NCBI RefSeq assembly: GCF_000143415.4 | Contig: NW_003314273.1 | Location: 506,074-570,073, forward strand | Reading direction: 5' to 3' | Source of the DNA: Selaginella moellendorffii | Lineage: Eukaryota; Plantae; Lycopodiophyta | DNA: 64,000 bases | Shown: positions 9,472 through 54,858 of the stretch, one piece after another | How positions within the stretch are numbered: position 1 is the stretch's first letter | How the letters are laid out: the number at the start of each line of letters is the position of its first letter | Notes under the pieces: model-generated | Seen by the model: only the letters and a program-made list of their open reading frames with translations | The model's database searches: none | What the model was told of the DNA's origin: nothing | Position numbers and translations under genes: made by a program

Positions 9472-9488
9472 ACACACACACACACACA
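9472..9488. repeat. (AC)n microsatellite in AT-rich spacer
   Basis: acacacacacacacaca. Confidence 0.9.
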
Positions 9489-11229
9489 ATATAAAGGTAT
9501 TCTTAAAGTATAACACCAGACTGGTATACAACTACTAAATTTTTTACAATTGTATTAGCTGATAATAATATATATTTTATCTTAAAAATATAAATAAATA
9601 AATAAAAATGGATTTAAAATTAGATTAAAGATATAGTTTTTTAATTATTTAATAAATAATAGTATTTAAATAGGATATTTATGTGAAGCAAAAACTCCAA
9701 CAACACCAACATGAGTGAGTACAAAAAAGCACTGCTGCCTAAAGATTAAAATTTATTATTTTCCATCACAACACTCACTTACTCAATTATTCTTTACTTT
9801 TCCTAAGGCTTTCTTTTGTATTTTCTCTCCCTCTCCCATCAATATTATTATTGTCCTTTGATCCTTTATGGCAATAAATAAAATATTAAACACATACCAT
9901 CTACAAGATCTCTTCTAGTTATGAGGTCTAGTTATGACCTAAAACTTGGTGAACTCAACATGAATAAACTAGTTTAGTTTTCTTGAAAGAATGGACAGTT
10001 TGTTTTAGGAAATTGAGAGAAATTTTGAGTTCTAGGGGTTAGATTTATATTCTTAGAGACCCTAGGACCATTAGGGGTTTTAACTTCCATGAATTTAGAG
10101 TGTAAATTTAAAGGATTTTTCTCGTTCTTACATTAATTTTCTACATTACCTCTTTCCACTTGGTTTTCTAGTGATTTCTCATGATTAGTATATTGATTCT
10201 GGTTTTTCTTTCTTTGGGTCGATGCGACTTGGCATCCTCTTTCCAACAAGCTAAAGAGCACCTTGTTTTGTGGAGGATTTAATTGCTAATTTAATGAAAT
10301 TTTGTCCATCACGCTCCTCTGTTTTTCATGGCAAATTTTTCAACACTCTAAGCTTGTGATTTTGAGACTGATTCAAGAATTTTTTTTTCTGGACATGTAA
10401 ATATAAAGACAAGCTTTTCGGAGAGTTCTTTCTTGGTAGCCAATTCGCTTTAAGCTATGACATGGAGTAGTTTTTCTCTCACGGCGCTTTATAGCTCAAA
10501 ATTGCAAGTTTTTAACTTAATCTTGAGGGAATTTGAGGTGTTATTCTCATGGAAATCATTACGGCCATGTTATTACCTTTTACCAATGTTAAAAATGAGT
10601 GTTTCTTGTACTAGGGAGTGCATTTTCTTTTGTTTTCCTTCTTACTGTCTAGAATTTAATGTTTGAATCAATTTTTTTTTGAGATTTTAGGCATTTTAAC
10701 TCATGGTTTTGGTTTCATTCTCTTGGTTTGAGTATAAACTTTTAAACAAGTCCATCCACACCTATTTTTGTGTGCAAAGTCAAGAGATTTCCATGCAAAT
10801 GTTTTCCTCTTAGGCATTTTGAGTATTGGAGTTTAATTTTTTCTATTTTCCCCCTTTTCTTTGCAATATTTTTTTCTTTTGTCGTGAGAAATTGGCATTT
10901 GCAAGAGTGAGAGTGATTTTATTTGGGAAAATCTACATGAGGATACTCTTTTATTTGGAGTTATCCCATTTAGATACTTTGCTCTCACACAAGTCAAAGT
11001 TCTTTGTGCGTTGTATTTTCCACAACCTGGCATCTACTACATAGTGGACATTTTATGCTAGTTCACACTCGTTCCAATTAGAGATGGCAACTAGCAAACT
11101 TCCATACAGTGCCTAGGGTATGGGGATATTTTTCACACCTTTTACGAGAGCTCGATTATCAAACTACTCTTTTTGATGAGGAGGATTCATCATTCATTAC
11201 AGATATCGAGTCAGGGAGTCCACCATCCA

Positions 11230-13090: not shown

Positions 13091-14904
13091 TTCTTCCATT
13101 ATTGAAGTTGACTAGGCTCTCAAGGTTTTTTTCCTGAAACTTATCGAGGATGACACGCTGTTGGAGATCCAAGTTGTTGACTACAATATGATTGACTTCT
13201 TCAACATGGACTAAACTACATCAACACTTTTGAGTACACTTTTGACTTTCCAGCTTAGTGATTACACTCTTGGTGGCACTTCTCACCCCAAACTTGCAGT
13301 CCAACCTTGCTACTCACTTGGGATACGACCATGACATAAAGGTGGCAGGCATTTTCTAGCAGCATCTCGACTTTTCCTTGGAGTTTCTCCCAACTTGGCA
13401 CTTCATCTTAGCTCTTCCCAAACTTAGGTTCATGGCTGGATCCCAACTTCATTCTGCTACAACACTCGAAGCATTCTCTGACACTATCGACACTTCACTC
13501 AACCACCAGATCTTCATCAGCGACACATGATGACTTCCATAGGTCCTTGGGGACACTTTCTACCATCCTCATGAGGCTCCCATCCTTCCAAGCAGTTCCA
13601 GCATCCTAGATTCTCTTACACTGACATTATTCACCACCTTAGGCATTTTTGATACAATCTAACACTTGAGGGTGACTAAGTTAGTTTCAGTGGCATTCTA
13701 GGCTTTTTATAGGATTCCTTGCATCCTCTTGATGCTTCCATCATCATCACCCATCACAGAAGCCACTTGCACTTATTTTTTTACTTTTTTTGTTTTTTTT
13801 GTTTTCCTTTCTGCTCTCACTCGTTTTACATCTTTCAGGTCAAGGAATTATGTGGAGAAAGTCTCTTTTAATGAACACGCTCTAGCTGTATTATTGATTG
13901 TATGAAAATTTCTCGACTCTTGTTGATTTGTGCTTCATTTCTTTAGTTTTTTTCCCTACATCAGTTCCATCCTCACATTTTCATCACCATTCTATATCAT
14001 CTATACTCTAGAATTCTCTACCACACACTACACATACCTAATAATATCTTTCACATTTTCCACCATTCATCATCCATTCATACTAGACATTTGTGGACAA
14101 CACTTCATTATAAAAGCTCTTCCAGACAAGCAAAAACACAAATCAAGATATTCTCATGCACAACATGTAAGATATTCAATAAACTAGTCACATATTGCAA
14201 CTTTCTTCTTTTTAGAACTAATTTCTTCTTCTAGTAGAATAGCTTGATTGCAAAGGGCATCCTTGAGCAGTAGTCCAGTAGTTTTTGGTGTGAGTAGTAG
14301 CTATGACTTCACATTTCACTACATTAGATTAGAGCCCATCCTTGGACACACTCAATTATATCATCCATCTACCAAAATCCCCTATCATCACTTTCTTCCA
14401 TTATAGTTCATCTTCTATTTCATAGTTACCACCATTAGGCAATACAGTCCCTATGCTTTCTTCTTCATTCTCAGCCAAAGTTTTGAGTATAAACTACATG
14501 AGTTTGAGGTTGCATTTGCATATTCACTTTCCAGAGTGTTTGAGCTTCTTTCCATTTCGTTTTTTTACTCTTTTCTTATCATTTTTCCCTTTTTTCTTAC
14601 TTTTTTGAGTATCTAATTCAACTACATAGTTTCCCATTGGGTTTTCCTTGTATCTTTGCACTTTAAACTCTTTTCCCATCTTCTACTTTCATCTTTATTT
14701 TATTTTTTATTTCCATCTCTTGTTTTCTTTCCCATTTCTCTTTGTTTCAGCAATTACCCACTCTAGACACTACATTTTAGCATATGGGAGCATCTTAGCC
14801 ATGGGTTCTTGCGCACCAAAATCTTGTGCACCCACCAATAGTTGTTTATTGCAGCATTAGCTCATTGCCACCTTCTCCTCGCATCACATGTTGCAGCTAA
14901 AGAA

Positions 14905-15025
14905 GTAACTCTTACTCTTGCTCCTAACCCTACTCTTGCCCCGCTCCTACTCTTACCTCTACCCCTATTTTTATTCCTACTCCTACTACTGCTCCTGCTC
15001 CCACTACTACTCTTACTCCTACTCC
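14905..15025. repeat. Degenerate 6-mer (ctactc/ctctta) array; also about 33465-33575 and 38805-38925
   Basis: Visible hexamer periodicity that creates spurious poly-L and RS ORFs. Confidence 0.8.
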
Positions 15026-15231
15026 CCAGTTGTAGATATGGGTGTCTTGAGAGAGAGGGAGAGGATATTTTGATTCTTAAAATATTCCAAATGATTGTAT
15101 AAAAACCATGTGAGGGTGAAATATCAAGGGTCCTCCTCATTTTCTCTTGTTGTTGAGTTTGAAGCTGCAGCTTTGTGAATTTATATGTGAGGGATGGATC
15201 CATAATTGGGGCTAAAAAATGCCCTAATAGA

Positions 15232-16326
15232 TACTCTTTCCACCTTTTGCCTTTGGGTGCCCTAGCCATGTGGAATCTTTGATGAGCAATGCCAAGTATC
15301 CAAGTAGGTAGTGCCACCCACACTTAGATTGGGAGCATTGACTATTTGATCTCCTAGGGGAGTTAGAGTTAGATCTTGAATATTTCACCAAGTTACCCCA
15401 CTTGTCTGTCTATATTCACTTTAGTCTTGGACTCCTCAATGGTTATATCATCACCCACCACATGGGTATAACTTTCCTTAGCCACATTGGTTTTACTAGC
15501 CAAACTAGTTCCATTGAAGTCCTCCACTTACTATCCTTTTAAAGCTCACTTGGGAAATAATTGCTTTGGGATTTCACTTCAGATTCAAACTCAAACTTGG
15601 ACTAGGTCTTGGACTCAGTCTTGGATTCGGTCTTGGACTCGGTCTTGGAGTCGGTCTAGGTCTTGGCCTCTATCTTGGTCCCAGTCCTGGTCCCTGTCTT
15701 AAGCTCCATTTTGGGCTCCATCTCAAACTCCTTCTTAGACTCCATCTAGACTCGATCTTGGGTCCATCTCAAACTCTATCTCAGGCTCCATCTTGGGTCC
15801 ATCTCGGGTCCATCTCGGACTCTTTCTCGGGCTCCATCTCGCATCCATCTCAAACTTCAATTCGGACTCTATCTTGGACTCCTCGGATTCCAACTTAGGT
15901 CCATCTCGGACTCAATTATGACACTTCCATGTGTCATATATTGATCCTTTTGTTTCCCTTTTCTAGAGGCTTGCTTATTGATTGCTTTATGCTTTCAATG
16001 GGATTTCCACTCTTGCTCTCAACTTTTTGAGTTAAAGCTTTTAGTCTAAATGTGTTACGCTGGTCTAGCTTCCACTTCAACCACTACCACATGGCACCCT
16101 CTTAGCTCCACTCTAGATAGCTATTGTTTGAGGATGCAAGAAGAGCAAAGATAGAAAGGTTTTAATTTCCCTTAAACTACTTAAATGGTCTAGAGTTTAG
16201 GGTTTAAGGATTTGTGTCTTATAGAAGTGTAGGTGTTACTACCTACTTGGATATTTGGTATGGCTCATCGAAACCTTGCTCTAGCCACATGGCTAGGGCA
16301 CCTAGAGGCAGAAGGTGGGGAGAGTA
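15232..16326. repeat. About 100-bp inverted repeat pair bounding about 1.1 kb (arms 15232-15325 and 16225-16326; copy 2 arms 39131-39232 and 40138-40239)
   Basis: The reverse complement of the right arm aligns to the left arm (ccaccttytgcctytrggtgccctag..atgtggctagagcaaggttt..gat.agc.at.cca..tatccaagtaggtag). Confidence 0.8.
15590..15915. repeat. Degenerate 12-mer arrays (actcggtcttgg, then ctccatctcggg); also about 39500-39830
   Basis: Visible 12-bp periodicity. Confidence 0.8.
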
Positions 16327-27548: not shown

Positions 27549-29339
27549 ATGGCGCGAACAGAGCAGGAGCGCAGTGGATGCGTCACAGGTTTGTGGTCTC
27601 TCTTTCGACCAAAAAAGGCGCACAAGGGCGACAACAAGGTCCACCCGGAAGCCATGGACGCGGCGGCCTCGAAGCTGAAGGTCCAAGATCGTGTCTGTGA
27701 GGCCGTCTCGGGAGAAGCCATGGACGCCGCCGCCTTGAAGTTGAAGGAACTCAGGCACGAGGTGAAAATCGTCTTAGAAGCGATACGACAGGAGCGAGGG
27801 CACAAGGAGCTGATCAAGCCGATCAAGCCGGAACAAGAGAAGGAGGACGAAGAGGAGAATCAAGAGAAGAAAGCGGAGCAGCTGAAGGAAGAGAAGAAAG
27901 CCGAGCAGGTGAACGAGGAGGAGAAAGAAGCCGATCAGATGAAGCCGATGAAGCTGGAAGAAGAGGAGGAAAAGGAAGCCGAGAAGCAGCTGAAGGAGGA
28001 GGAGCAAGAGAAGAAAGCTGAGCAGCTGAGCGAGGAGGAGCAGGAGAAAGAAGCCCATGAGACGAAGGAACTCAGGCGCGAGGTGAAACAGGAGCAAGGT
28101 CACAAGGAGCAGCCGCAGCTGGAACGAGAGGAGAAGAATCAGCCGAATCAGCCGATCAAGCCGATCAAGCCGATGAAGCAAGAGCAGGAACAGGAGGAGG
28201 AGCAGCGGATGAAGCCGATGAAGCAGCAGCTGGAACAAGAGGAGGAGCAGATGATCAAGCCGATCAAGCAGCAGCTGGAACAAGAGGAGGAGCAGATGAT
28301 CAAGCCGATCAAGCAGCAGCTGGAACAAGAGGAGGAGCAGATGATCAAGCCGATCAAGCAGCCTCTGGAACGGGAAGACGATCAAGAGAAGATGAAGCAG
28401 CAGGAGAATGACAAGGCCAAGCAGGAGGAGCAGCGACCCAAGCCAATTCTACTGCCAGCCGGGGGTCGTCGTCCAGGTATGGTTCCTTTTGCTTCTCGCA
28501 TTCTTCTTCTACTGTGACTCACGATGGCCTTCTGGACTTGCAGGTTCCAGGCCGAAGATGGTTCGCTTCTCTTCCTCAGCGGAGGACATTCTTCCCGACG
28601 GCACCCGACGGCGGAGTGAAACCCATCTTAGCGATGGCCGAGGGGGCTATGTTGAGTTCGCGTATCTCGAAGCTTTCCACAAGGCAAACCGGTGGCTAAA
28701 CCAGAGGGGAAAAACCGAGAAGAAGATCCGCAGCTTGGAAGAGGAAAAGCGCGAGGAAACAGAAGAGGAGAAGCACGAGGAAAAGTCTTGGAGTGTTAGC
28801 GCGCTCCGGATTCTGATCAGACTCACCGAGCAGCTTTACGAGGAGCTCAACGGCAAATCCAGCGACCGAGAGAGGATCAAGCGAGCGCGGAAGATGATGA
28901 GGCTCCAGAAAATGCTGGATAGGATCCCGAGTGAGAGGAAACCGTGGAAGAAGCTTCAGTCCGGCGAGGTGGTCTTCGTGAAGGAGGCAAAAGAACTATA
29001 TGATCGTGCGGGGAGAGATTTTGTTGCCGAATTCAAGAGGAGACAGGTAAGTTTGATATACCTTCCAGATTCCAGATGGCCGTTTGCTAATAACTTCCGT
29101 GTTTGTTGTAGAGAGCTGAAGTGAACGATGAGTGTTTGTTTTGTCGGAACCATGATGGCGAGAAGATGATCGGCCGGGCTGGAGCGAACTCTAAGACGAC
29201 TAGACCCTGGGTTTACCTGAGAAGAGAACACGAGCAAACTGTTCTAAGCACGTCGAAGAAACGAGAGATGAAGTTGGCTCCGAGCTCGAGAAGTTGGCTG
29301 CAAGGATTGGTCAACTGGAGGCCAGTGCTCGGACTCTAG
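27549..29339 (+). CDS. Coiled-coil protein copy 2 (30 aa longer by VNTR expansion)
   Basis: Near-identical to 3988-5688 plus two extra 45-bp units. Confidence 0.6.
28221..28355 (+). repeat. Coding 45-bp tandem repeat x3 (KQQLEQEEEQMIKPI)
   Basis: Three units here versus one at 4660-4704. Confidence 0.9.
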
Positions 29340-32300
29340 CATCGGAGAAGCCAACTCTCAAGAGTCAAATCCAGAAGTTGGATCTCCAAGCAAGTTGAGC
29401 AGCACAGGAGGAGGCCACTAAAGCTATAGACCAGTTAAGTCGAGAGAAGATCGACCTTCTCGAGGACTCGACTCCAAAGATTTGCAACTGTCCAAGACGT
29501 GAAAGCAGTGCGTGACAACCGTGTCTCAGGGCTCCAGGCGGAGAAGTCCATCACACTTCAGGCGTCTAAACAGGCCAGCGACCAGCCTCCACACTCTTCT
29601 AAGTCAAGAGAAGATCAATGGATCAAGTTTGACTACACTCTACAGTGTCTGGAGCAAGGAGGGATCTATCTTATCAGCTTTCCAGTCGACGGAGATGAGA
29701 CAGGAGATACTGCTGCGGTATAATGTTCACAGCTTGAAGGAATAGTAGCAAGGGAACGACTGCAACGAGATGGTGATAGCGAGAATATGATATAGCTGAA
29801 GCTGCTCGTGACGGTGGGGGTATTCGGATTCACAGAGAGGGCTGCAGAGACTATAAGACAGACTACACTCGACGTTCTCTGTCATCTGGTAGAGCTCTCT
29901 AGTTGACGGAGACTTTGAAAACGGGTCAGGGCTGTCCAGGAATGCTCGTACAGCCGCTCGGATGAAAGTATCAGCAAAGAACTCAGTGTCAGATTGCTTC
30001 AAGGGAAATCAAATCCAAAAGTTGGAGCGGGAAAACTCGGAGCTGTGGCCAAATATCCAAGCAAGTCGAGCACCACAGTAGCAGGTCACTAAAGCGTCAA
30101 GTCTGAGCTAAAGACCAGTCTCCACACTCTAAGTCAAGGGAAGATCAACGACTGGAATTGAAAGTTTCGGAAGATGGTGGCCGAGATGGAGAGTCGAAAG
30201 CGGCGGTTGACGAGGCTCCAGGCGGAGCAGTCGGCTGGAAGTGCAGCAGAGTCCATCAAACTTCGGCATCTAAACAGGCTAGCCCGCCTCCACACTCTTC
30301 TAAGTCAAGAGAAGATCAATGGATCAAGTTGGGCTACACTCTACAGTGTCTGGAGCAAGGAGGGATCTATCTTATCGGCTTTCCAGTGGACGGAGATGAT
30401 TCAGGAGCGCCTGCTGCGGTAAGGCTGTCCATGGTAGTAGCGAGGAACGACGTAAACCAGTGTCAGATGGCTGCAAGATGGCGAGAAGACGATATAGCTG
30501 AAGCTGCTCGTGACTGGGGTTTCGGATGGCTGCAGAGACTATAAGACAGACTACGCTAGACGTTCTCTGTCATCTGGTGGAATGAGGGAAGTGTTCGGAC
30601 AGGAGTTCTTGAAGGAGAAGCCCCAGGGGATAATGGCTGACGGAGTCGAATCCGCTGCACGAGGTGTAGCTCTCGGCGAGAGCACGTGATGGCGGAGTTT
30701 GGAAGTGCAAAGGCGAGGCTGGAGAAGCAAGTAACTGGCAGCTGATGGAGAGGATCACGGGACTCGAGGCGCTGGAGGAGAGAGAGACGTGCCAGATGCA
30801 AAGCAAAGCTTTGGGCGAGGAGCTCTGAAGGATGAAGAAGACAAGCCGAGGAGAACCGATGTGAGAGCAGAGGTTTGACGGATCAGATGGACGCTACATG
30901 CGACAAGAAGGAGCATCTGGCTTCGCAGGAAGCTGTGTTTTTGCATGCTTCCGCTCAAGCTTCTCAGCACGATCCAAGGCCTGAAGTGGCGGAAGCATTC
31001 CCTAACTGCCAGAGGTTCTAAGCACGTCAAAGAAACGAGAATGGAAGTTCAAGAAGTAACCAGCTCTCGAGAGTCAAATACAGAACAGAGGTGCAAGCCA
31101 AGTACTGACAGCTCGAGCAGCGCAGGGAAGCAGTAGCAAGCCTCCAAAGCGCCAGAGACCAGTCTCCACACTTCTAAGTCAAGAGAAGATCAACCTCTTC
31201 GAGGAGATATCCTCCCTCGACTCCAAAGTTTCGGAGATATCTTGATCAATCGGGAGATAGCAGATAATTTTGTCAAGATCTGGGCTTCTCAAGCGGAGCT
31301 CACTGAGACGGTGCCCGAGATCGGAGCAGTCAGCCAGCCGAGTGGAGAAGAGTCCATCAAACGTTGGTGTGAGAACAGCGAGATGAAGGAGAAGATGAGA
31401 TGCCAAGACGGATCAAAGACAAAGCTCTCTAGTTGATGGAAACAGGACGAGAGCTTCAATGCTGTCCAGGATCACTCTTACAGGTGCTTGGATGATAGAA
31501 GATGATGATGGCAAGATGATCTCAAACTCGAAGAAACTGCTTGTGGCAGTGGAGCCAGAGGTTCGGCTTCACAAAGACTGAAAAACGGCTGATGTTCGCC
31601 CCTGACATGCGGAGACTACAAGAGCTGGAGCGAACTCTAAGACGAAGCAACAGTCATAAAGACAGAAGATTGGACGAGTTTCATGGAACGTGGAAGCTGG
31701 TGCAAAGCGATTCAGAGGTTCAATGGCCACCTTTACAATCAAGAAATGTGGACTGAGGGTACGTAGAGTCATTCGTTTTTTCCTCTTCCATTCATTTCAT
31801 CCGTGTTGTTAAACAGAAGAAGCAAGCTGCAGCGACACACAAATTGTGATGGTAGCTCCTTTAGTATCAGCAACAAATCCTATGGTATTTTTTTGCTTTT
31901 TAATTTTCTCCTCTGGTGGAATATCTTCTGAGCTCCAACTTGGTCCAGATCGTTGGAGGCCGTCTCTTCGAGACTAAATAAATAAAACATCTCAGAGACT
32001 ACGCTAAGGAGCTGCTTATTCTGGCCAACTTGTGAGTAAATAACCTTGAGAGATTATGTTTCTTTTCTATTTGGAAAATAGTCTGACTGCCAACTTGGTC
32101 CAGATCATAGGAGGCCCAATTAGCATAATTATGCCTAGTTAGCATCATCCTATTATATACATTGGGCATATATTGTAAAATATCATAAATGTGGCTTCAG
32201 GTATCAAAAAATACTTGTTAACCAGTACTTTTGGACATTCTCTCTTTTGCCATAAAGGTTGATATAGTTGGACCACTTTATTATTCTTCCCTCTTATGTT

Positions 32301-32414
32301 AGTGGAGTTAATTGGACATCTTAAGTGTACTTAAACTAAACAAGCATAAGGATTGAATTTTTTATATATTATTAGCTAAATATGTTGTATGTAGCTAATG
32401 ATAAGAACCTTCAT

Positions 32415-32960
32415 GTGTTGAGTCTAGTTCCTCAATAATGCTTTATGATAGCTTATTGTGTCCACCAAACAGCCTCACTATCATACTTCATATATTAGTT
32501 CCATTCAGTCTTTTGTGCTATTTATAGTAAGTGGTTAAATCTGTCTAAAATGCATATCTATGGAATCTAGAGTGTCATGAATCCCATGGTGTTGTTCCTA
32601 CATCCCAATTCACAATTTAATTCTATTCTATATCTAGTAAATTTTCAAATCCCATAAACTAGTTTTTGAGATTGGGGTGAAAGCCTAAAAGCATGCATTT
32701 TTCTAGGGTAAGGGATGAGGGGTTGTGGGGGGTTCTAAATATATAGTAAAGATAGTATTTGGAAGCATTATTGACCATCTAAAATATTAATTTGGCTCAT
32801 GCTAGGTTGTATTGCTCATGATTTTGTGTTTAGCTTGGGAATAATCTCAAGTTCCATATTGCTCTAATCAGTGGGGTATCCACCTTTTTGTTATAGGCCA
32901 CCAGTATGCCAGAATTGGGCTAAACACCATCTGATACTATTTTACATGCAAACGTTGGAT
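32415..32960 (+). mobile_element. Older diverged LTR relic of the same LTR family
   Basis: cctcaataatgct..atgatagcttattgtgt..ccaaac and ttggggtgaaagcc match the solo LTR at reduced identity. Confidence 0.65.
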
Positions 32961-35900
32961 ATGGGGAGTTAGTGTTCGTAAAAGATATTAAGTGTGTACC
33001 AAATCTTCATTTTGTTGCACAAAGGGTTTGGAGTTTGATATAAGCTATAAATATTTTTTTTCTAATTTGCCAACTTACCTTTTTTATTCGACCACGTTTG
33101 CTTTGGCATTAGTTAAGTTCCCTTGCCAAGGTCCCCACTTATTATACCATCTTTTACTTGGTCCTACTTGGATTTAGCTTCCTCACTACACAAGTAATGA
33201 AGTGTTAGCCATGCATCTACAGATTCGTAATATTTCTCTTAATCCCTCTCCTCAGGTGAGTTTGGACTTAAGATTTAATTACAATCCCTATAACCACAAC
33301 CAGCTAAACACACAAAGCCTCTAGGTTTTTTATATGCCTAGGTATAGCAAAACTTAATCACAAAACCTTCTAAATCCCAAGACTTGGGTGCATTTCTTGT
33401 TTCGAGTGTTGCAACACAAATTTATTGTTGCTTATCTTTACGTCACATGTTATAGCCAGAGAAACCACTCTTACTCCCACTTCTACCCTTGCTCCTATTT
33501 TTACTTCCACTTTTACTTCTACTCCCGGTCTTACTATTATTGTTGCTCCCACTCTTACTCTCACTCCTACTCTCTAGTTACAGGTATGGGTGTTTTGAGA
33601 GATAGGGAGAGGAAATTTTGATTCTCAAAATATTCCAAATAGTAAAATTCCACAAAGGCTATATCAAAGGTCCTCCCTATTTCCTCTGGCAATTAAGTTT
33701 GGAATTACGGTTTTGTGAATTTGTATGTGAGGGATGGATCCGTGGTTAGGGCTGAAAGATGACCTAAAACTTAGTGAACTCAACATGAATAAGTTAGTTT
33801 AGTTTTCTTGAAAGAATGGAGAGTTTGTTTTAGGAAATTGAGAGAAATCTTGAGTTCTAGGGGTTAGATTTATATTCTTAGAGACCCTAGGACCATTAGG
33901 GGTTTCAACTTCCATGAATTTAGAGTGTAAATTTAAAGATTTTTCTCGTTCTTACATTAATTTTCTACATTACTTCTTTCCACTTGGTTTTCTAGTGATT
34001 TCTCATTATTAGTATATTGATTCTGGTTTTTCTTTCTTTGGGTCGATGCGACTTGGCATCCTCTTTCCAACAAGCTAAAGAGCACCTTGTTTTGTGGAGG
34101 ATTTAATTGCTAATTTAATGAAATTTTATCCATCACAGTCCTCTGTTTTTCATAGCAAATCTTTCAACACTCTAAGCTTGTGATTTTGGGACTGATTCAA
34201 GAATTTTTTTTTCTGGACATGTAAATCTAAAGACAAGCTTTTTTTAGTGTCCTTTCTTGGTAGCCAATTCGCTTTAAGTTATGACATGGAGTAGTTTTTC
34301 TCTTACGGCGCTTCATAGCTCAAATTTGCAAGTTTCTAGCTTAATCTTGAGGGAATTTGAGGCGTCGTTCTCATGGAAATCATTACAGCCATGTTATTAC
34401 CTTTTACCAATGTTAAAAATGAGTGTTTCTTGTACTAGGGAGTGCATTTTCTTTTGTTTTCTTTCTTATTGTCTAGAATTTAATGTTTGAATCAATTTTT
34501 TTTTGAGATTTTAGGCATTTTAACTCATGGTTTTGGTTTCATTCTCTTGGTTTGAGTATAAACTTTTAAACAAGTCCATCCACACCCATTTTTGTATGCA
34601 AAGTCAAGAGATTTCCATGCAAATGTTTTCCTCTTAAGCATTTTGAGTATTGGAGTTTAATTGTTTCTATTTTCCCCCTTTTCTTTGCAATATTTTTTTC
34701 TTTTGTCATGAGAAATTGGCATTTGCAAGGGTGAGAGTGATTTTATTTGGGAAAATCTACATGAGGATACTCTTTTATTTGGAGTTATCCCATTTAGATA
34801 CTTTACTCTCACACAAGTCAAAGTTCTTTGTGCGTTGTATTTTCCACAACCTGGCATCTACTGCACAGTGGACATTTTATACTAGTTCACACTTGTTCCA
34901 GTTAGAGATGGCAACTAGCAAACTTCCATACAGTGCCTAGGGTATGGGGACATTTTTCACATCTTTTACGAGAGCTTGATTATCAAACTACTCTTTTTGA
35001 TAAGGAGGATTCATCATTCATTACAGATATCGAGTCAGGGAGTCCACCATCCATGGCTCTTCCTACATAAATCCACATTCTACAGCGAGGCACCGACTTG
35101 ACATACTTATCTGGCAATGGCGACATCTTTGCCAATACACATGTCACTCATTTTGAGCAATATTGCATGTCAAATGGCATCATCGAGGATGATCACAAGC
35201 TTTGTGACTTCTTGCGATCGCTCACTAGCCGAGCAGAAACATGGGTAGAGACACTCTTGGAGGTAGATATGGCTGACAACTCCACATTCAAAGCATCTTT
35301 CTAAGGTCACTTTGATCAGCAGTGACCAACAAATCGCTTACTCATGGATTTGTTTGTTTTTTGGCAAGGAGCACGTGAATCTGTGCTAGAATATATGATG
35401 TGGTTTAGGTTTTACTAGAAGGAGTGTGTCCTCATCACAAATGAACCTCATGGCATCACTATATTCATCTTTGGCCTCAAGGGAAATCTCAAATGCAAGA
35501 TGCTTAAGCGAGAGTTTTGGATGTGTTATGAGGCATTTGCTGTAGTAGAGACTTTGGAGTGGGATCTTCTCCAACATCTCAAGATTCCTAGGGTAGAGGA
35601 GATTTTCCTCCCACCTTCAGATGAGAGTTCATGTGCTACCATGATCCATTCTTCTCCAGCCCCACACAGTGATGATAGAGTTCCCTTAATGATCGAGAAG
35701 GCATTGTCGAAGTATGCAAGATACAAGGAGATTATCTAGTAGCAATAATAAATGCAAGAGAAGCTATTTGAGGAGCTTAAAGCATGCTGCTTACAGTAGG
35801 CAGGGAGACTAAGATGCCCTCTTCGTTCTTGGTACTACTCGCATTGTAGTGTTATGATACACAGCATAAATAGATGTTGGAAGCTTCATTTAGAACTTCG

Positions 35901-38900
35901 ACCACCTTTTGTCCAGCATGTTGAAGAGTAACTTCTACCAGACAACATATTTCTTCCATGGCTAGAGATAGATACCAGCAACAATTGGAGTAGAAAGCGA
36001 TCAAAGACACCCTTTCGTTGAGCTATGGAAACACTGATGCATGTCAACATAGTTTATGTTGTAGAGGACGGTTATAAGATGGCTGCTATGACTCAAGGGC
36101 GCAAGAAGGTTTCTCCTTTAGCCCCAAATATTGATGGTGAGCAAGATCCAGCTCTAGTTTCTAGAACTTCCCCATCTCTCATGGCATGTAAGTTACCCCA
36201 TGCTTCGGTATTTGCAATGCCACCCACATCCTTGGCCACAACTTCAAATCCAACAATTGGATATTCATCCAACTTTCAATGTGGGGTCTCTCAGCTGCCC
36301 TCCACTCTTTCTCAAGTCCCATAAGAAGTTCTTGCTTAAATTGTTGACACTTTAATCTTGGTGAGCTTTTGCAATATATATCTGGTTTTACTCCTTAGCT
36401 AGAGGCTTTGCCAAGTCCACAGGCATCCCCATGGAACATCAGTATAACATCCACATCATCAACACTCATACCACTTATGATCCCAAAGCATTCTTTGTGG
36501 AGGTCCACATCAGCGATAGATCTTTGACAGCACAAGCATTACTTGATTCTAGATCCCAGAGCAACATCATCTCCCTTAACTTGGCACTTTCTAGTGGCTT
36601 GGAAGTGGTGAGAAACACAACTATCATCCTCAAAATGTTTGTCAATCACTGAATTGTTCCTACAAGCATCTGTTGGAATGTCAAGATCTTGGTGCAAGGA
36701 GTGGTTTGTATGCTAAATTTCCTTGTTGTGGACTTCCAACAGCTAGGATTTAGGAAGCTGAAGGACTTTATTATCTTAGGACGGACTTACATGACAATTT
36801 GGGCCAAGGGAGAATCAATGATTACCAACAGTATTTATGTAGCAACTCTTCTCAATACCCATGGTCATTCTTTACTTCCATCTAGCTTGTCTCAAGTGGA
36901 TGCTTCTTCCATTATTGAAGTTGACTAGGCTCTCAAGGTGTTTTTCCTGAAACTTATCGAGGATGACACGCTGTTGGAGATCCAAATTGTTAACTACAAT
37001 ATGATTGACTTCTTCAACATGGACTGGACTACATCAACACTTTTGAGTACACTTTTGACTTTCCAGCTTAGTGACTACACTCTTGGTGGCACTTCTCACC
37101 CCAAACTTGTAGTCCAGCCTTGCTACTCACTTGGGATACGACCATGACATAAAGGTGGCAGGCATTTTCTAGCAGCATCTCGACTTTTCCTTGGAGTTTC
37201 TCCCAACTTGGCACCTCATCTCAGCTCTTCCCAAACTTAGGTTCATGGTTGGATCCCAACTTCATTCTGCTACAACAATCGAAGCATTCTCTGACACTAT
37301 CGACACTTCACTCAACCACCAAATCTTCATCAGCTACACATGATGACTTCCATAGGTCCTTGGGGACACTTTCTACCATCCTCAGGAGGCTCCCATCCTT
37401 CCAAGCAGTTCCAGCATCCTAGATTCTCTTACAGTGACATTATTCACCATCTTAGGCATTTTTGATGCAATCTAACACTTGAGGGTGACTAAGTTAGTTT
37501 CAGTGGCATTCTAGGCTTTTTATAGGATTCCTTGCATCCTCTTGATGCTTCCATCATCATCACCCATCACAGAAGCCACTTGCACTTTTTTTTTTTCTTT
37601 TTTTGTTTTTTTTTTGTTTTTCTTTCTGCTCTCACTCTTTTTACATCTTTTTTCAGGTCAAGGAATTATGTGGAGAAAGTCTCTTTTAATGAACATGCTC
37701 TAGCTGCATTATTGATTGTATAAAAATTTCTCGACTCTTATTGATTTGTGCTTCATTTCTTTAGTTTTTTTCCCTACATTAGTTCCATCCTCACATTTTC
37801 ATCACCATTCTATATCATCTATACTCTAGAATTCTCTACCACACACTACACATACCTAATAATATCTTTCACATTTTCCACCATTCATCATCCATTCATA
37901 CTAGACATTTGTGGACAACACTTCATCATAAAGGCTCTTCCAGATAAGCAAAAACACAAATCAAGATATTCTTATGCACAACATGTGAGATATTCAATGA
38001 ACTAGTCACATACTGCAACTTTCTTCTTTTTAGAACTAATTTCTTCTTCTAGTAGAATAGCCTGATTGCAAAGGGCATCCAACTGCTTTCAAAGGTGTGG
38101 TTAACAAAGGCAACACCCTTTTCTTCTAACTCAAATCATAGGTGAAGCAATTTGCCACCTTTTGAGCAGTAGTCCAGCAGTTTTTGGTGTGAGCAATAGT
38201 TATGACTTCACATTTCACTACATCAGATTAGAGCCCATCCTTGGACACACTCAATCATATCATCCATTTACCAAAATCCCCTATCATCACTTTCTTTCAT
38301 TATAGTTCATCTTCTATTTTATAGTTACCACCATTAGGCAATACAGTCCCTATGCTTTCTTCTTCATTCTCAGCCAAAGTTTTGAGCACAAACTACATGA
38401 ACTTGAGGTTGCATTTGCATATTCACTTTCCAGAATGTTTGAGCTTCTTTCCATTTGGTTTTTTTATTCTTTTCTTCTCATTTTTCCCTCTTTTCCTACT
38501 TTCTTGAGTATCTAATTCAACTACATAGTTTCCTATTGGGTTTTCCTTGTATCTTTGCACTTTAAACTCCTTTCCCATCTTCTACTTTCATCTTTATTTT
38601 ATTTTTTATTTCCATCTCTTGTTTTCTTTCCCATTTCTCTTTGTTTCAGCAATTACCCACTCTAGACACTACATTTTAGCATATGGGAACGTCTTAGCCA
38701 TGGGTTCTTGCGCACCAAAATCTTATGCACCCACCAATAGTTGTTTATTGCAGTACTAACTTATTGCCACCTTCTCTTCGCATCACATGTTGCAGCTAAA
38801 GAAGCAACTCTTACTCTTGCTCCTAACCCTACTCTTGCCCCGCTCCTACTCTTACCTCTACCCCTATTTTTATTCCTACTCCTACTACTGCTCCTGCTCC

Positions 38901-41582
38901 CACTACTACTCTTACTCCTACTCCCCAGTTGTAGATATGGGTGTCTTGAGAGAGAGGGAGAGGATATTTTGATTCTTAAAATATTCCAAATGATTGTATA
39001 AAAACCATGTGAGGGTGAAATATCAAGGGTCCTCCTCATTTTCTCTTGTTGTTGAGTTTGAAGCTGCAGCTTTGTGAGTTTATATGTGAGGGATGGATCC
39101 ATAATTGGGGCTAAAAGATGCCCTAATAGATACTCTTTCCACCTTTTGCCTTTGGGTGCCCTAGACATGTGGCTAGAGCAAGGTTTTGATAAGCAATGCC
39201 AGGTATCCAAGTAGGTAGTGCCACCCACACTTAGATTGGGAGCATTGACTATTTGATCTCCTGGGGGAGTTAGAGTTAGATCTTGAATATTTCACCAAGT
39301 TACCCCACTTGTCTGTCTATATTCACTTTAGTCTTGGACTCCTCAATGGTTATATCATCACCCACCACATGGGTATAACCTTCCTTAGCCACATTGGTTT
39401 TACTAGCCAAATTAGTTCCACTGAAGTCCTCCCCTTACTATCCTTTTAAAGCTCACTTGGGAAATAATTGCTTTGGGATTTCATTTCAGATTCAAACTCA
39501 AACTTGGACTAGGTCTTGGACTCAGTCTTGGACTTGGTCTTGGACTCGGTCTGAGTCTTGGCCTCTATTTTGGTCCCAGTCCCAGTCCCAGTCCCTGTCT
39601 CAAGCTCCATTTTGGGCTCCATTTTGGGCTCCATCTCAGACTCCTTCTTAGACTCCATCTAGACTTGATCTTGGGTCCATCTCAAACTTTATCTTATGCT
39701 CCATCTTGGGTCCATTTTGGGTCCATCTCGGACTCTTTCTCGGACTCCATCTTGCATCCATCTCAAACTTCAATTCGGACTCTATCTTAGACTCTTCGGA
39801 TTCCATCTCAAGTCCATCTCGGACTCAATTCTGACACTTCCACGTGTCATATGTTGATCCTTTTGTTTCCCTTTTCTAGAGGCTTGCTTATTGATTGCTT
39901 TATGCTTTCAATGGGAGTTCCACTCTTGCTCTCAACTTTTTGAGTTAAATCTTTTAGTCCAAATGTGTTACACTTGTTTAGCTTCCACTTCAACCACTAC
40001 CACATGGCACCCTTTTGGCTCCACTCTAGATAGCTATTGTTTGAGGATGCAAGAAGAGCAGAGATAAAAAGGTTTTAATTTCCCTTAAACTATTTAAATG
40101 GTCTAGAGTTTAGGGTTTAAGGATTTGTGTCTTATAGAAGTGTAAGTGTTATTACCTACTTGGATATTTGGTATGGCTTATCGAAACCTCGCTCTAGCCA
40201 TATGGCTAGGGCACCTAGAGGCAGAAGGTGGGGAGAGTACCCGCAATGTTTGCATTGGGCTATAGTGTTTTGAAATATTATCCTAAAGTCCTAGACTGTG
40301 GAAAGGAAAAGGAGTAATCCTCTTGTGTAGTGACTAAACATATAATCACGTGGCAAGGAAGTTTTAGAGGTGAATAGGACTTAGTGGTCAGGCCTTCAGG
40401 CCTTTGGGCTAACCCAGTGGTAGTGTTGGCAAGCACAACTATGGATGGAAAGGGATTAGATAAAGACTGAAAAAGGGATATTAAAGAAAGGTGTTTTCTA
40501 TGTCTCTAGGCATCCTAAGGATGTTAAAATGTGGTCATAAGATGACCACTCATGGATAGATGACTCAATCTTTGGGAGACAGCATTGTGGTATAGGTAGT
40601 TCTAGGCTACCAATTAAATAAAGGTGAATGGATATAGCCTTAGTATAATAAGATGATATGTTATTGGTATCTTTAGGTGTTTATCGTGGGATTGGACATT
40701 TGGAGCATTTGGACCAAGTGCAAAAGTTGAGTGGCATACAAGTCATTCATGAGGATAGCAAGTCCTTCAGATGGGAATAAAATTTATAAAAATGGTGAGT
40801 GAAACTCCTCCAAATGGTCAAATGTGTGGTTAAGTGATTTAGTTGCTTACATAAGGAGGATGTTCTAATATTACTTTCTATAACCCATTTAATTTATATG
40901 AATTTTTTATGATGCTGTATAGATTGAATAATTCTTTGGAGACTTTTTGGATGATATTCTTTACAATATGTTAAAGGTGACTATTAATTTCATTGATAAT
41001 GTTTTGATCCACTTTAAGGGGACATAGGAGGAACACACTTGTGATGTTTGTAAAACATTGGGATCAGCTATAGGAAGTTAATTTGACATTGATACGGTTA
41101 AAATATATATATCTTGAGGATTATATTTTTCATGAAAATTTACAAATTGATTTTGACAAACTTGTGGATGTTATGAAGTTCTCTATTCCAAAGTGCATGA
41201 ACAATATGCAACACTTTCTTGACAAGGTGTAATATCTTTTTCATGTTATTGTCTTTTTTATCATTGCAAGCATTAATGAAGTTGTTCATACTATTTTTCA
41301 TCTAATTTGGGATTGTGAATAGACATTTATAGATCTTAAAGATGTGTTGACAATTTTTCTAGTTTTTGAGTATTTTAACTACACTCAACCTTTTGTAAAT
41401 GCTTTTGACATTATCTCAAAGGTGTGTTGTTGCAAAAGAGCATGATTGTGTTTGGTTAATATAATTCTATTGTGTATATTAGCCATATGTTGCAACTAAT
41501 GGAGGTGAACTACTCCATGAAAACAAAACTTTCAAAAAGATTTATGCGTATTTGCATAGTTTTTAGACATTGTTAAAAGGTG

Positions 41583-51246: not shown

Positions 51247-53324
51247 ATGCCGGAGCTTCCCGAGGTAGAGGCCGCGCGGCGGGCGGTGGAGCTCCACTGC
51301 AAGGGCCTCATTTGCCGCGCCAGCGTCGCCGACGACACGACCGTGATCGAAGGCATGGCGCCGTTTGATATGCAGCGCCGCCTTGTGGCCAAGAGGATCG
51401 TCGCGGCGCATCGCAAAGGCAAGCAGCTGTGGCTGGAGCTGGACGAGCCCCCAAGCATTTGCTTCCAGTTTGGTATGTCGATTTCCTGGGCTACATTTTC
51501 CTTCCTCTTTTTTGTTATGTGTTCTTTGTGAATTTCCTAGGCTACATTGGATTGTTCTTTGCTTCCTTCCTCTTTTTTTGTGATAGCATTTTTTTCTTGT
51601 GAAAGTTTTTGTTCTAGTGTTTGCTCTGTGCAGGCATGGCCGGAGCTGTGTATGTGAAAGGAGTTAAGAGCACGAAGTATGTGAGGTGAGTGGTGTTCGA
51701 GTTGCTTTTTCTCTTTTGCTTGCAGCGCTTACATTTTTTGTTTTGGTGCTTGTAGGTCTGCTGTGAAGGATGAAGATGAGTGGCCCTCCAAATACTCCAA
51801 AGTTCATCTCGTGGTGCGTTTAGCTAGATGAATGTGCAATGTGCGCAACTTATCTTTGTTTCATCAGCTGGACACTGGTGTGGAGATGTCGTTCACGGAC
51901 AAGCGCAGGTTTGCTCGGGTCCGACTTATACAAGATGTACGTAGCTCGTTTTTTTAATTTTATTTTGGTGGTTTCTCTGATGGCTTTTTCCGCCTTGAAG
52001 CCACGCTTGTCTCCGCCAATATCTGAGCTGGGACCGGATGCTTACACAGAGCTTCCGGATGAAACTACTTTCGCCGACTCTGTTGCGAAAAAGAAGACGG
52101 CTATCAAGGCTGTTCTACTTGACCAGGTGTGGCGATTTCCTCGTTTTGTTTTGTCTGACTGTTATCTTTGCTCCAAGCAGAGCTTTATCGCGGGGATTGG
52201 CAACTGGATTGCTGATGAAGTACTCTATCAGGTAGGCAAAAACTTTGTGTGCCGTTTCTGGTCTTACAGTTGTTATGGCAGTCTAGAATACATCCTGAGC
52301 AACCAGCGTCCACCTTAACAGCTATAGATTGCGAGCGACTTCGTGGGGCTATCAAAGAGGTTAGACCACAATCCCAGTTTTTTAATCTTTGTTTTTGCTT
52401 ACTGGTCTTTAATTCCAAAGACTTAGAAAACTTAGAATTCAAGTGCATATACATGTAGGTTGTGATGACTGCGGTTGACGTTGATGCTGATCTTGAACGC
52501 TTTCCTAGAGATTGGCTTTTTCATCACCGCTGGGGTAAAAAGCCTGGCAGTGTAAATGGTGAGTTTCCTAAGAGTTTTAATATTGCGCATATGGCAGGTT
52601 CTTGAAACGGCCATCTCTGTGGAAGGCGATTCGTCCCATTATCCAGACGACTGGATTTATCAACACCGCGAGAAGAAATCTGGTGCTACTGTGAATGGTC
52701 TGCATTCTCATGCGTGCATATCGTTGGTGTTTTTTCTTTTCTTTTTACTTTTTCGTTTATCCACTTTGTTTTTAATCTCGGTTGGCACTTTTCCAGGGAA
52801 AAAGATCGAGTTCATCACTGTTGGCGGAAGGGTATGTGAACTTTATGTCGTGAGGCTCTTGGTCACAGTGTGTTTTTGGCTGTCAGACGTCTGCTTATGT
52901 GCCGGAGCTGCAGAAGTACGATGGGGTTCCAAAGAAGAAGACGCCATCGAGGAAGAAATCTATCAAGGGGAAAGTGGACGACGAGAATGAAGTGGAAGAA
53001 GAGGAGGAAGCCGCGCCAAAGAAGAAGGCTGTCTCCCGGAAGAAAAAACCCGTGGACGACGACGGGGAATCTGATGGTGATGACAAACCAAAGAGGAAAG
53101 GGGGTGCAGTGAAGGCAAAAAGCGATGACGTTGAGCAAGAAGCACCAAAGAAAAGGGGAAGGCCTGCAAGGAATCAAGCAAAGGTAGGCACTGTTCTTCC
53201 GGGTAGCGATGAGGAGCAGGATGAGAAAGTCAGTTCGGGAAGAGTTAAAAGAGGCCGGGGGGGCTCCAAGTCGCAAAGTGGGAAGAAAAAAGCGAAAGTG
53301 AGCTCCTCTAAGCAGTCATCGTGA
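51247..53324 (+). CDS. FPG1: Formamidopyrimidine-DNA glycosylase (plant MutM homologue), multi-exon, with alternative exons 52459-52558 and 52598-52697
   Basis: N-terminal MPELPEVE, RKGKQLW, FGMAG, H2TH [31 protein letters not shown], zincless finger GGRTSAYVPELQK, K/E-rich tail. Confidence 0.96.
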
Positions 53325-53922
53325 AAGCGCGTTGATGGGCTTTCCAAAGGTGGTGAGGTTTGATTTCTTCGGTCTTTCTTTTCTAGCTGTGGTTCGAGAG
53401 TAATAGTCTACTAGAGCTGTGAAGTTCTCTCTCGGTTTTTTCGACGTTCTTACTGTTCGTCTTTGTGCAGGATGAGGCTAAGCTGGACGACGAGGACTTA
53501 AGTTATGGCCTCGGAGCAAAATGCGTTGGTGGTGGAAGTGGATTAAATCCGAGCACAGTGGCAGCAGCAGTAAGATCGCAGTGGTCATCGTTTCTCGGTA
53601 AGTTTCCGAGATTCAGAGAGGCTTGCCCCTCTTTGAATTCGTATCCTTATAGTCAGCAGCAGCAGCACCAGTGCTTTACGATCGGGATTTCTAGCTGTAG
53701 TAGCAACAGGTTAAGTGCGTTGACTCCAATCGTCTCTCGGGCTCCTTTGAGAGAAGAAGGGCGACTCGGGATTAAATTCCTGTCCTACGTTCTCCGAAAA
53801 TCCGCCTACTTATAAGCAAATACAAGTTTTTTTCTAAGTTCTCGTAGTCTCCACCGTTGGATAATTTGGTGTGAAATCCTGTCCGTTGAGATAAAACACC
53901 ATCCCAATCGTTCATTTGCTAG

Positions 53923-54465
<543 letters not shown>

Positions 54466-54858
54466 GTAGAAATCTCTCTCGCTGTGTTTTGTTTCAATCC
54501 GGAAGGAAAAATTTCAAGAGCCCTCTTTTAACTTGAAGTAGCTTGTCTCCCAGGAATCTATTTGATAGAAGATCGCAGTGATCATCACTTCTAGAGGAGG
54601 CTTGCTCCTCTTTGAATTTATCCAGCCAAAATCGAAGTGATCATCGCTTCCAGGAATTGCTCCAGCGTAACTCGCGAGAGAATTGATCCAGCGATGAATC
54701 GCGAGAGAAGCTCGAGTTTCTCCAGAGATCCGTAGAACGTTTTTCCAAGTTCTCGTTATTCTTCCCATACTTTGTTCTCCAAATCATTTTCTTTCGACCA
54801 CCGTCCGACTGTGTAATGAATTTTACTGCGAACGATTCAGACACCTTAGATTTTCCTG

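What the first reader, a model, noticed from the sequence alone, without database searches (positions are those of the whole stretch)
52459..52697. Tandem mutually exclusive 100-nt exons in the FPG DNA glycosylase, separated by only 39 nt
Seen: exon A 52459-52558 (VVMTAVDVDADLERFPRDWLFHHRWGKKPGSVNG) and exon B 52598-52697 (VLETAISVEGDSSHYPDDWIYQHREKKSGATVNG) are homologous, equal in length and phase, and each has AG/GT borders. Either one alone keeps the frame into GKKIEFITVGGR. Including both, or retaining the 39-nt spacer, hits TGA at 52603-52605. Knowledge (from memory): Arabidopsis MMH/FPG isoforms 1 and 2 differ by alternative exons of the HxREKK and HxRWGKK types in this region. Inference: the exon duplication is ancient, exclusivity is enforced by a sub-minimal intron plus a frameshift, and the switch swaps the segment between the H2TH motif and the zincless finger, near the lesion-binding loop.
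Basis: partly seen in the sequence, partly recalled or inferred. Interest (0 to 1): 0.75.

Follow-up and report, generated by a model that had tools for sequence, protein, structure and literature searches.

The report
Ancient alternative exon pair in plant FPG
The spikemoss DNA-repair gene FPG carries two tandem versions of one 100-base exon and uses one or the other; vascular plants have kept this arrangement for over 400 million years, and databases already list both products, so it is a well-documented case, not a new mechanism.

Summary
Exons A (52459-52558) and B (52598-52697) are homologous, both 100 nt, in the same phase, with AG/GT borders and a 39-nt spacer. Either one alone gives a 410-aa FPG. 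Both together, neither, or a retained spacer give a premature stop.

The locus is the Selaginella moellendorffii FPG/MMH gene. RefSeq already lists the B form (X1, X3), the A form (X2) and a fourth form, X4. I rebuilt all four exactly from the window. X4 carries both exons in frame, through a donor 7 nt inside A (46-nt intron). So exclusivity is leaky.

A is the ancestral type (RWGKKPG, as in bryophytes, fungi and algae). B is a derived type (REKK) shared with the clubmoss Diphasiastrum and with angiosperms; it is the version in the AtFPG1 crystal structure. Eudicot loci have A, a 49-57-nt spacer, then B. A moss locus, a liverwort locus and one rice-relative gene have A only.

In angiosperms both exons are at least as conserved as the flanking coding sequence. 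Double-inclusion isoforms always use cryptic sites that lengthen the spacer. This fits, but does not prove, a spacer too short to splice.

This alternative splicing has been known in Arabidopsis since 1998. The scan noted other alternative exon pairs in this genome, not this one.

The parts
51247..52359 (+). Constitutive exons 1-7 of the FPG/MMH gene: 51247-51472, 51634-51685, 51756-51813, 51868-51936, 52001-52126, 52181-52231, 52282-52359. They begin with the catalytic MPELPEVE N-terminus.
   Evidence: All borders are GT-AG. Joined with the later exons they reproduce four RefSeq proteins exactly. Pfam finds the Fapy_DNA_glyco N-domain at residues 1-130 and H2TH from residue 145.
52360..52458 (+). 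99-nt intron upstream of exon A. When B is chosen the intron removed is 52360-52597 (238 nt).
52459..52558 (+). Alternative exon A, 100 nt, of the ancestral RWGKKPG type. It encodes residues 221-253 plus the first base of G254.
   Evidence: Used in RefSeq X2 (P0001), an exact match. It is 73.5% identical to Diphasiastrum A and 59% to the single exons of a moss and a liverwort.
52552..52553 (+). Alternative GT donor 7 nt inside exon A (GTAAAT). Joined to B's acceptor it removes a 46-nt intron and includes both exons in frame (93 + 100 nt).
   Evidence: A model built with this junction equals RefSeq X4 (P0151, 509 aa) exactly. The other haplotype has the same form (P0352), and 13 angiosperm proteins use the same junction type.
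52559..52597 (+). 39-nt spacer between A and B. It has GT...AG ends, is 62% A+T, and has candidate branch sites only 12-22 nt from A's donor.
   Evidence: The 13 other introns modelled in this window are 49-161 nt long.
52598..52697 (+). Alternative exon B, 100 nt, of the derived REKK type.
   Evidence: Used in RefSeq X3 (P0355) and X1 (P0354), both exact matches. It matches Diphasiastrum B better (55%) than Diphasiastrum A (38%).
52603..52605 (+). TGA reached when A and B are joined through their canonical sites, or when the spacer is retained.
   Evidence: The old JGI 268-aa model (P0350) is A plus the retained spacer, ending at this stop.
52797..52831 (+). Constitutive 35-nt exon (GKKIEFITVGGR) that starts the zincless-finger hairpin. 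It follows the 99-nt intron 52698-52796.
   Evidence: Pfam places Fpg-like_C at residues 239-271.
52887..53325 (+). Last coding exon, encoding the lysine-rich tail, with its stop at 53323-53325. An optional intron 53184-53470 swaps in a different 114-aa tail that ends at 53815.

Best explanation
This is the FPG/MMH base-excision DNA glycosylase gene of Selaginella moellendorffii. Its eighth coding exon exists as two tandem homologous copies, and one is chosen per mRNA.

Each copy encodes residues 221-254. That covers the end of the last H2TH helix, a short helix, the short loop that stands in for the bacterial 8-oxoG capping loop, and the first strand leading into the zincless finger. Exon A is the ancestral version (RWGKKPG). 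Exon B is a diverged version (REKK) that arose by tandem exon duplication before lycophytes and seed plants split.

Productive mRNAs carry A or B (shown by annotation). Two features disfavour both together:
- Each exon is 100 nt, so canonical double inclusion or double skipping shifts the frame into a stop (shown). Such mRNAs are probably removed by nonsense-mediated decay (inferred).
- The spacer is only 39 nt, 10 nt shorter than any other intron modelled in this window. It places B's branch site 12-22 nt from A's donor, so the A donor and the B acceptor probably cannot be paired (inferred).

The block is leaky. A donor 7 nt inside A makes a 46-nt intron and gives an in-frame protein with both segments (annotated as X4).
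For: - Anatomy and frames.
- Four RefSeq isoforms and the old JGI model are rebuilt exactly from window coordinates. Names and accessions.
- Both exons hit AtFPG1 residues 222-251.
- Type A is the general eukaryotic/bacterial type and type B was seen only in plant sequences.
- Diphasiastrum has A and B isoforms of one gene.
- Eudicot loci show A (100 nt), a spacer of 49-57 nt, then B (103 nt), all with AG/GT borders.
- Single-exon loci in Physcomitrium and Riccia.
- The clade of Diphasiastrum B plus angiosperm B has 96/97 support.
- In 52 angiosperm proteins mean pairwise identity is 78% for the A core and 87% for the B core, against 64% and 77% for flanking constitutive sequence.
- AlphaFold models of the A and B isoforms have the same secondary structure and both match 3TWK/3TWM (TM-score normalised to the target, 0.85-0.93).
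- Every double-inclusion protein in the databases uses a cryptic site that lengthens the spacer intron (46 nt here, 60-69 nt in angiosperms) or retains the spacer.
Against: - No RNA-seq junction counts were available. Use of each exon rests on RefSeq models, not on reads I saw.
- The absence of canonical A+B proteins is partly an annotation bias, because such mRNAs are out of frame.
- A 46-nt intron is annotated, so the margin that would make 39 nt unspliceable is only 7 nt and has not been measured.
- Selaginella B is a very long branch. A Selaginella-specific duplication is not formally rejected (AU p = 0.20).
- Two of the three amino-acid differences between the two haplotypes of the 410-aa protein fall in exon B. 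This hints at relaxed constraint on B in this species.
- No functional difference between the A and B enzymes has been shown.
Confidence: 0.75

Rival explanations
1. Exclusivity is enforced only by the reading frame and mRNA surveillance. The 39-nt spacer is spliced like any small intron, and the resulting A+B mRNAs are simply degraded.
For: - Selaginella introns are unusually short. The 13 modelled here are 49-161 nt long, and its intron-length distribution is described as fungus-like (PMC6157073).
- RefSeq accepts a 46-nt intron at this very spot.
- The spacer has good GT and AG ends.
- Out-of-frame products would not appear in protein databases, so their absence there says little.
Against: - Across distant lineages the spacer stays just under the local intron minimum: 39 nt here, 49-57 nt in eudicots.
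- All annotated double inclusions switch to cryptic sites that add 7-16 nt.
- Candidate branch sites lie 12-22 nt from A's donor.
Confidence: 0.25
2. One of the two exons (B in Selaginella) is a decaying duplicate with no function of its own, and its inclusion is splicing noise.
For: - Selaginella B is a very long branch in the tree (1.78).
- It carries 2 of the 3 amino-acid differences between the haplotypes of the 410-aa protein (nominal p about 0.02, post hoc).
- Its donor GTCTGC is weak.
- The predicted model is less confident over B than over A.
Against: - B keeps an open frame, both splice sites and the residues invariant across all B exons (P16, W19, R24, K26, K27, G29).
- Two of the four RefSeq isoforms at this locus use B alone, including the one with the conserved lysine-rich tail.
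- B is kept in Diphasiastrum. In angiosperms it is the most conserved part of the region (87%) and is the version in the biochemically active AtFPG1.
Confidence: 0.07
3. The Selaginella pair and the angiosperm pair arose by independent duplications of the same exon and converged on the REKK motif.
For: - The AU test does not reject Selaginella A and B as sisters (p = 0.20).
- Several lineages have a single exon: a moss, a liverwort, two unidentified plant contigs and a rice-relative gene.
Against: - Order (A then B), phase, borders and a short spacer are the same in both groups.
- Diphasiastrum B sits inside the angiosperm B clade with 96/97 support.
- Holding all B exons together costs 0.00 log-likelihood units, against 6.9 for the rival.
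- Diphasiastrum B matches Selaginella B better than Selaginella A.
Confidence: 0.08

Closest known systems
[quoted passage not shown]
   Same: - It is the same gene family, and the isoforms diverge at the same place, immediately before the short capping loop.
- AtFPG1 carries the B-type motif at residues 222-251.
- A Brassicaceae RefSeq isoform (Camelina X4, P0261) contains both the A and the B segment, so the crucifer locus has the same pair.
- The truncated A-plus-spacer product seen here (the JGI 268-aa model) resembles the short, inactive AtFPG-2 described in reviews.
   Different: - The papers I could read describe variable C-termini. They do not describe a homologous duplicated exon pair, its age, or the short spacer.
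- I could not open the 1998 and 2001 primary papers, so they may describe more than the reviews say.
- Here the spacer is 39 nt and exon B is 100 nt, against 49-57 nt and 103 nt in eudicots.
Mutually exclusive exons enforced by steric hindrance (alpha-tropomyosin exons 2/3 type; from my own knowledge)
   Same: Two adjacent alternative exons, where the branch site of the downstream exon lies too close to the donor of the upstream exon for the two to be spliced together.
   Different: - Not demonstrated here.
- The organism has very short introns, so the limit is unknown.
- A donor 7 nt upstream bypasses the block.
Mutually exclusive exons enforced by frameshift and nonsense-mediated decay
   Same: The exon length is not a multiple of three. 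Double inclusion or double skipping gives a premature stop upstream of later exon junctions.
   Different: Decay of those mRNAs was not tested. In-frame escape isoforms exist.
Mutually exclusive exons selected by competing RNA structures (Dscam, 14-3-3zeta, ATE1; PMC6071210, PMC7797038)
   Same: A tandem duplicated exon array.
   Different: The region 52340-52816 folds no better than shuffled sequence (z = -0.56). There is no sign of docking or selector pairing.

Membership tests
Fpg/Nei (H2TH) DNA glycosylase, plant/fungal zincless-finger group | N-terminal catalytic Pro2/Glu3 (PELPEVE) | tested here: met
   Exon 1 opens with MPELPEVE. Pfam Fapy_DNA_glyco matches residues 1-130, E 1e-25.
Fpg/Nei (H2TH) DNA glycosylase, plant/fungal zincless-finger group | An H2TH domain followed by an Fpg-like C domain in place of a zinc finger | tested here: met
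   H2TH at 145-234 and Fpg-like_C at 239-271, both above Pfam cut-offs, for the A and the B isoforms.
Fpg/Nei (H2TH) DNA glycosylase, plant/fungal zincless-finger group | Fold matches a solved plant FPG | tested here: met
   Both isoform models hit 3TWK/3TWM/3TWL first, with TM-score (normalised to the target) 0.85-0.93 and rmsd 1.7-3.0.
Fpg/Nei (H2TH) DNA glycosylase, plant/fungal zincless-finger group | Glycosylase / AP-lyase activity | not testable with these tools
   Needs purified A and B isoforms.
Mutually exclusive tandem-duplicated exons | Adjacent exons that are homologous, of the same length and phase, with compatible splice sites | tested here: met
Mutually exclusive tandem-duplicated exons | mRNAs exist with one exon or the other | tested here: met
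   RefSeq X2 (A) and X1/X3 (B) are rebuilt exactly. This is annotation-level evidence; I did not see reads.
Mutually exclusive tandem-duplicated exons | The two exons are never both in one productive mRNA | tested here: not met
   RefSeq X4 (and X6 on the other haplotype) join 93 nt of A to all of B in frame. 13 angiosperm proteins use the same junction type and 26 use acceptors inside B.
Mutually exclusive tandem-duplicated exons | The pair is conserved in other species, with both copies under constraint | tested here: met
   Diphasiastrum isoforms, eudicot loci and conservation figures.
Steric-hindrance type of mutual exclusion | The distance from donor to branch site, or the intron length, is below the minimum the spliceosome accepts | tested here: inconclusive
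   The spacer is 39 nt, against 49-161 nt for 13 other introns in this window and 46 nt for the X4 intron. The species' true minimum is not known.
Frameshift/NMD type of mutual exclusion | Double inclusion or double skipping gives a premature stop upstream of a later exon junction | tested here: met
   TGA at 52603-52605, with junctions downstream at 52697 and 52831. The decay itself was not testable.

The most novel reading that the evidence does not exclude
The exon switch gives vascular plants two distinct FPG enzymes from one gene. One has the ancestral fungal/bacterial-type loop (A). The other has a vascular-plant-specific loop (B). They would differ in lesion range, DNA-end handling or partner binding.

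The only plant FPG studied by crystallography and enzymology (AtFPG1) is the derived B form. The full-length ancestral A form has never been assayed. In grasses the two versions may have been split between two paralogous genes.
Probability: 0.3. Interest if true: 0.65.

Novelty: new member of a known kind. Interest (0 to 1): 0.42.

Why it matters
Mutually exclusive exons are rare in plants, and few are known to be this old. Here both copies have been kept for over 400 million years, next to the lesion-recognition loop of a DNA-repair enzyme.

The comparison shows three things. The textbook plant FPG (AtFPG1) uses the derived copy. The ancestral-type full-length isoform is uncharacterised. The short spacer is kept just under the local intron size in distant lineages.

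This gives a simple natural system for asking how short a plant intron can be. It also gives a clear biochemical question about why plants keep two FPG loops. It is not a new principle: the splicing event is already annotated at this locus and has been known in Arabidopsis since 1998.

Tried and rejected
- **Competing RNA structure.** The fold of 52340-52816 is no more stable than shuffles (z = -0.56), so I dropped this as the selection mechanism.
- **Primary papers.** Ohtsubo 1998, Duclos 2012, Kathe 2009 and the Selaginella genome paper are not held. Structural and Arabidopsis statements therefore rest on reviews.
- **Literature searches.** Searches combining mutually exclusive exons with FPG or At1g52500 found nothing relevant.
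- **Clubmoss and fern DNA.** DNA for Diphasiastrum, Sphagnum and Adiantum could not be fetched. The clubmoss spacer length and the fern locus remain unknown.
- **Search with the Diphasiastrum B segment.** It returned only Diphasiastrum itself, so nothing was learned about ferns or gymnosperms.
- **Two single-exon plant contigs (L008, L009).** They could not be assigned to a taxon and are not used as evidence of loss.
- **Tree of the 34-residue segment.** It cannot place Selaginella B.
- **Joined models.** Searches used single exons by reference or database protein ids. Joined translations were made only inside scripts from the window file, for frame checks and exact comparison with proteins already fetched.

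Full report
**What is in the sequence**

The + strand between 51247 and 53325 holds an intron-rich gene that opens with MPELPEVE, the catalytic N-terminus of Fpg-type DNA glycosylases. With GT-AG borders throughout, I model seven constitutive exons: 51247-51472, 51634-51685, 51756-51813, 51868-51936, 52001-52126, 52181-52231 and 52282-52359. The two exons of the finding follow, then 52797-52831 and 52887-53325.

Exon A (52459-52558) and exon B (52598-52697) are each 100 nt. Each is preceded by AG and followed by GT, and 39 nt separate them. They share 53/100 nt and 13/33 residues without gaps. In the whole 64-kb window the only other match to either exon is its partner (E 1.3e-07).

A alone or B alone gives a 410-residue protein. 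A plus B through the canonical sites, or a retained spacer, runs into TGA at 52603-52605. Skipping both shifts the frame.

**Whose gene it is, and what is already annotated**

Earlier notes of this scan name the genome as Selaginella moellendorffii, and this is borne out. Searches by single exon and by database protein id returned RefSeq proteins named formamidopyrimidine-DNA glycosylase isoforms X1-X4 of that species. Translations assembled in a script from the window match them letter for letter.

| Model built from the window | Database protein |
|---|---|
| B + canonical tail | X3 (P0355, 410 aa) |
| B + alternative tail | X1 (P0354, 478 aa) |
| A + alternative tail | X2 (P0001, 478 aa) |
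| First 93 nt of A + all of B + alternative tail | X4 (P0151, 509 aa) |
| A + retained spacer | old JGI 268-aa model (P0350) |

The second haplotype carries the same set. So use of both exons is already in the public annotation.

Exclusivity is not absolute. X4 uses a GT at 52552-52553, seven bases inside exon A. This removes a 46-nt intron and keeps the frame. I saw no reads, so all of this is annotation-level evidence.

Joined translations were made only inside scripts.

**Which exon is the original**

A profile of the two exon peptides found 570 proteins. The A motif (W-L/I-F-H-x-R-W-G-K...) is the general one, found in fungi, green algae, bryophytes and some bacteria. The B motif (R-E-K-K, without the W-G) appeared only in plant sequences.

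The Arabidopsis crystal structure AtFPG1 carries the B motif at residues 222-251. A is therefore the ancestral version and B the derived one.

**How old the pair is**

- *Clubmoss.* Diphasiastrum complanatum has two products of one gene that differ only in this segment, one A and one B.
- *Eudicots.* Genomic contigs close to Arachis and Olea, and metagenome-borne contigs closest to legume sequences or to no close named relative, all show A (100 nt), a spacer, then B (103 nt), with AG/GT borders. The spacer is 49, 52, 53 or 57 nt. The 49-nt value comes from copies whose B exon is broken.
- *Malvaceae.* Protein models that read through the spacer imply 53 nt in Gossypium and 50 nt in Hibiscus.
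- *Bryophytes.* The loci of the moss Physcomitrium patens and the liverwort Riccia sorocarpa have one A-like exon and no B.

In a tree of the segment, Diphasiastrum B falls inside the angiosperm B clade (96/97 support). Selaginella B is a very long, unplaced branch. Holding all B exons together costs no likelihood (AU p = 0.42). Making Selaginella A and B sisters costs 6.9 units but is not rejected (p = 0.20). Within lycophytes, each Diphasiastrum exon matches its Selaginella namesake better than the other copy.

The most economical reading is one duplication before lycophytes and seed plants diverged. It happened either after the split from bryophytes or with loss in bryophytes.

**Are both copies maintained?**

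I compared 52 angiosperm proteins that happen to contain both segments.

| Region | Mean pairwise identity |
|---|---|
| A core | 78% |
| B core | 87% |
| 30 constitutive residues upstream | 64% |
| 22 constitutive residues downstream | 77% |

Neither copy decays neutrally in angiosperms.

In Selaginella itself the picture is less even. Two of the three amino-acid differences between the haplotypes of the 410-aa protein lie in exon B and none in A. B's branch is also long. B may be under weaker or different constraint in this lineage, though its frame, splice sites and invariant residues are intact.

**Where the segment sits**

Pfam places H2TH at residues 145-234 and the Fpg-like C domain at 239-271. 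The alternative segment is 221-254.

AlphaFold models of the B isoform (P0355) and the A isoform (P0001) give the same elements: a helix at 208-227, a short helix at 240-244, and strands from 250 to 269. Both models match the Arabidopsis structures first, with TM-score (normalised to the target) 0.85-0.93. Confidence over the segment is higher for A.

A review states that AtMMH-1 has only a short remnant of the bacterial 8-oxoG capping loop. It also states that the shorter Arabidopsis isoform diverges immediately before that loop (PMC10573277). So the switch replaces the end of the H2TH domain, that loop and the approach to the zincless finger without changing the fold. Whether it changes specificity is unknown.

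**How the choice is probably enforced**

Shown: the exon length (100 nt, or 100/103 nt in eudicots) makes canonical double inclusion or double skipping out of frame.

Inferred: those mRNAs are removed by surveillance.

Also inferred: the spacer is too short to be spliced.
- It is 39 nt here. The 13 other introns I could model in this window (nine in FPG, four in the neighbouring RPL37a gene) are 49-161 nt.
- Candidate branch sites in the spacer lie 12-22 nt from A's donor.
- In eudicots the spacer is 49-57 nt. From memory, that is below the roughly 60-70 nt usually needed there.
- All 55 database proteins that contain both segments avoid the canonical spacer. Fifteen use the -7 donor in A (46 nt here, 60 nt in angiosperms). 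Twenty-six use acceptors 10, 13 or 16 nt inside B (63-69 nt). Six retain the spacer. The rest are odd models.

This is what a sub-minimal spacer predicts. The sample is biased, though, because out-of-frame products are not annotated as proteins.

No unusual RNA structure is predicted around the pair (z = -0.56).

**Comparison with what is known**

Alternative splicing of Arabidopsis FPG/MMH has been known since 1998, with up to seven isoforms that differ after the H2TH motif. Only AtFPG1 has been characterised in depth, and the short AtFPG-2 is reported inactive.

The open literature I could search does not describe the event as a duplicated, homologous exon pair. It does not give its age or mention the short spacer. 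I could not read the primary papers.

The mechanism classes (steric hindrance, frameshift plus decay) are textbook. I therefore file this as a new, well-supported member of a known kind.

The scan has noted other alternative exon pairs in this same genome, in ferroportin, SC35 and NADK2.

**Verdict**

The duplication is ancient and both exons are used. The frameshift holds and the location is right. Exclusivity is leaky, the pair was not found in the two bryophytes checked, and the spacer argument is untested. Interest is moderate.

Noticed in passing
window 53184-53815: An optional 287-nt intron (53184-53470) in the last FPG exon replaces the conserved lysine-rich tail with a different 114-aa tail (RefSeq X1, X2, X4). 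That tail has 6 amino-acid differences between the two haplotypes, against 3 in the whole 410-aa canonical protein. It looks unconstrained and may be a non-functional reading of 3' sequence.
   Followed up: partly
L010 (Oryza brachyantha); L015, L037, L038 (metagenome plant contigs): The rice-relative FPG gene has exon A only, with about 146 nt to the next exon. Three genomic plant contigs of unknown taxon have exon B only, with a roughly 425-nt intron upstream and no A remnant. Reviews say sugarcane has two MMH genes that diverge after the H2TH motif. Possibly some monocots split the two exon versions between two paralogous genes.
   Followed up: partly
L039-L042 (metagenome contigs, closest to legume sequences): A second legume-like FPG copy has a 49-nt spacer, an A exon with RWRKKPG, and a B exon that aligns only with a frame break. 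It may be a decaying paralogue.
   Followed up: no
L008, L009: Two plant contigs of unidentified taxon carry a single A-like exon, followed after 81 nt and 181 nt by the next constitutive exon, with no B. If they are ferns or gymnosperms, B was lost there.
   Followed up: partly
window 52598-52697: Two of the three amino-acid differences between the two Selaginella haplotypes of the 410-aa FPG (S227A, H234Q) fall in exon B and none in exon A (nominal p about 0.02, post hoc).
   Followed up: partly
window 53966-54470: A ribosomal protein L37a gene lies just downstream of FPG on the same strand. It has four introns of 52, 49, 57 and 63 nt, which I used as extra examples of local intron size.
   Followed up: partly
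window about 4000-16000 and 28000-40000: The base-composition profile and weak paired tblastn hits (5509/29160, 15440/39347) repeat with a period of about 23.7-23.9 kb. This suggests a large direct duplication inside the window.
   Followed up: no
L016, L028 (metagenome contigs): These contigs align to FPG proteins without introns across the alternative region and carry B only. They look like plant transcripts in metatranscriptomes, that is, B-only mRNAs.
   Followed up: no
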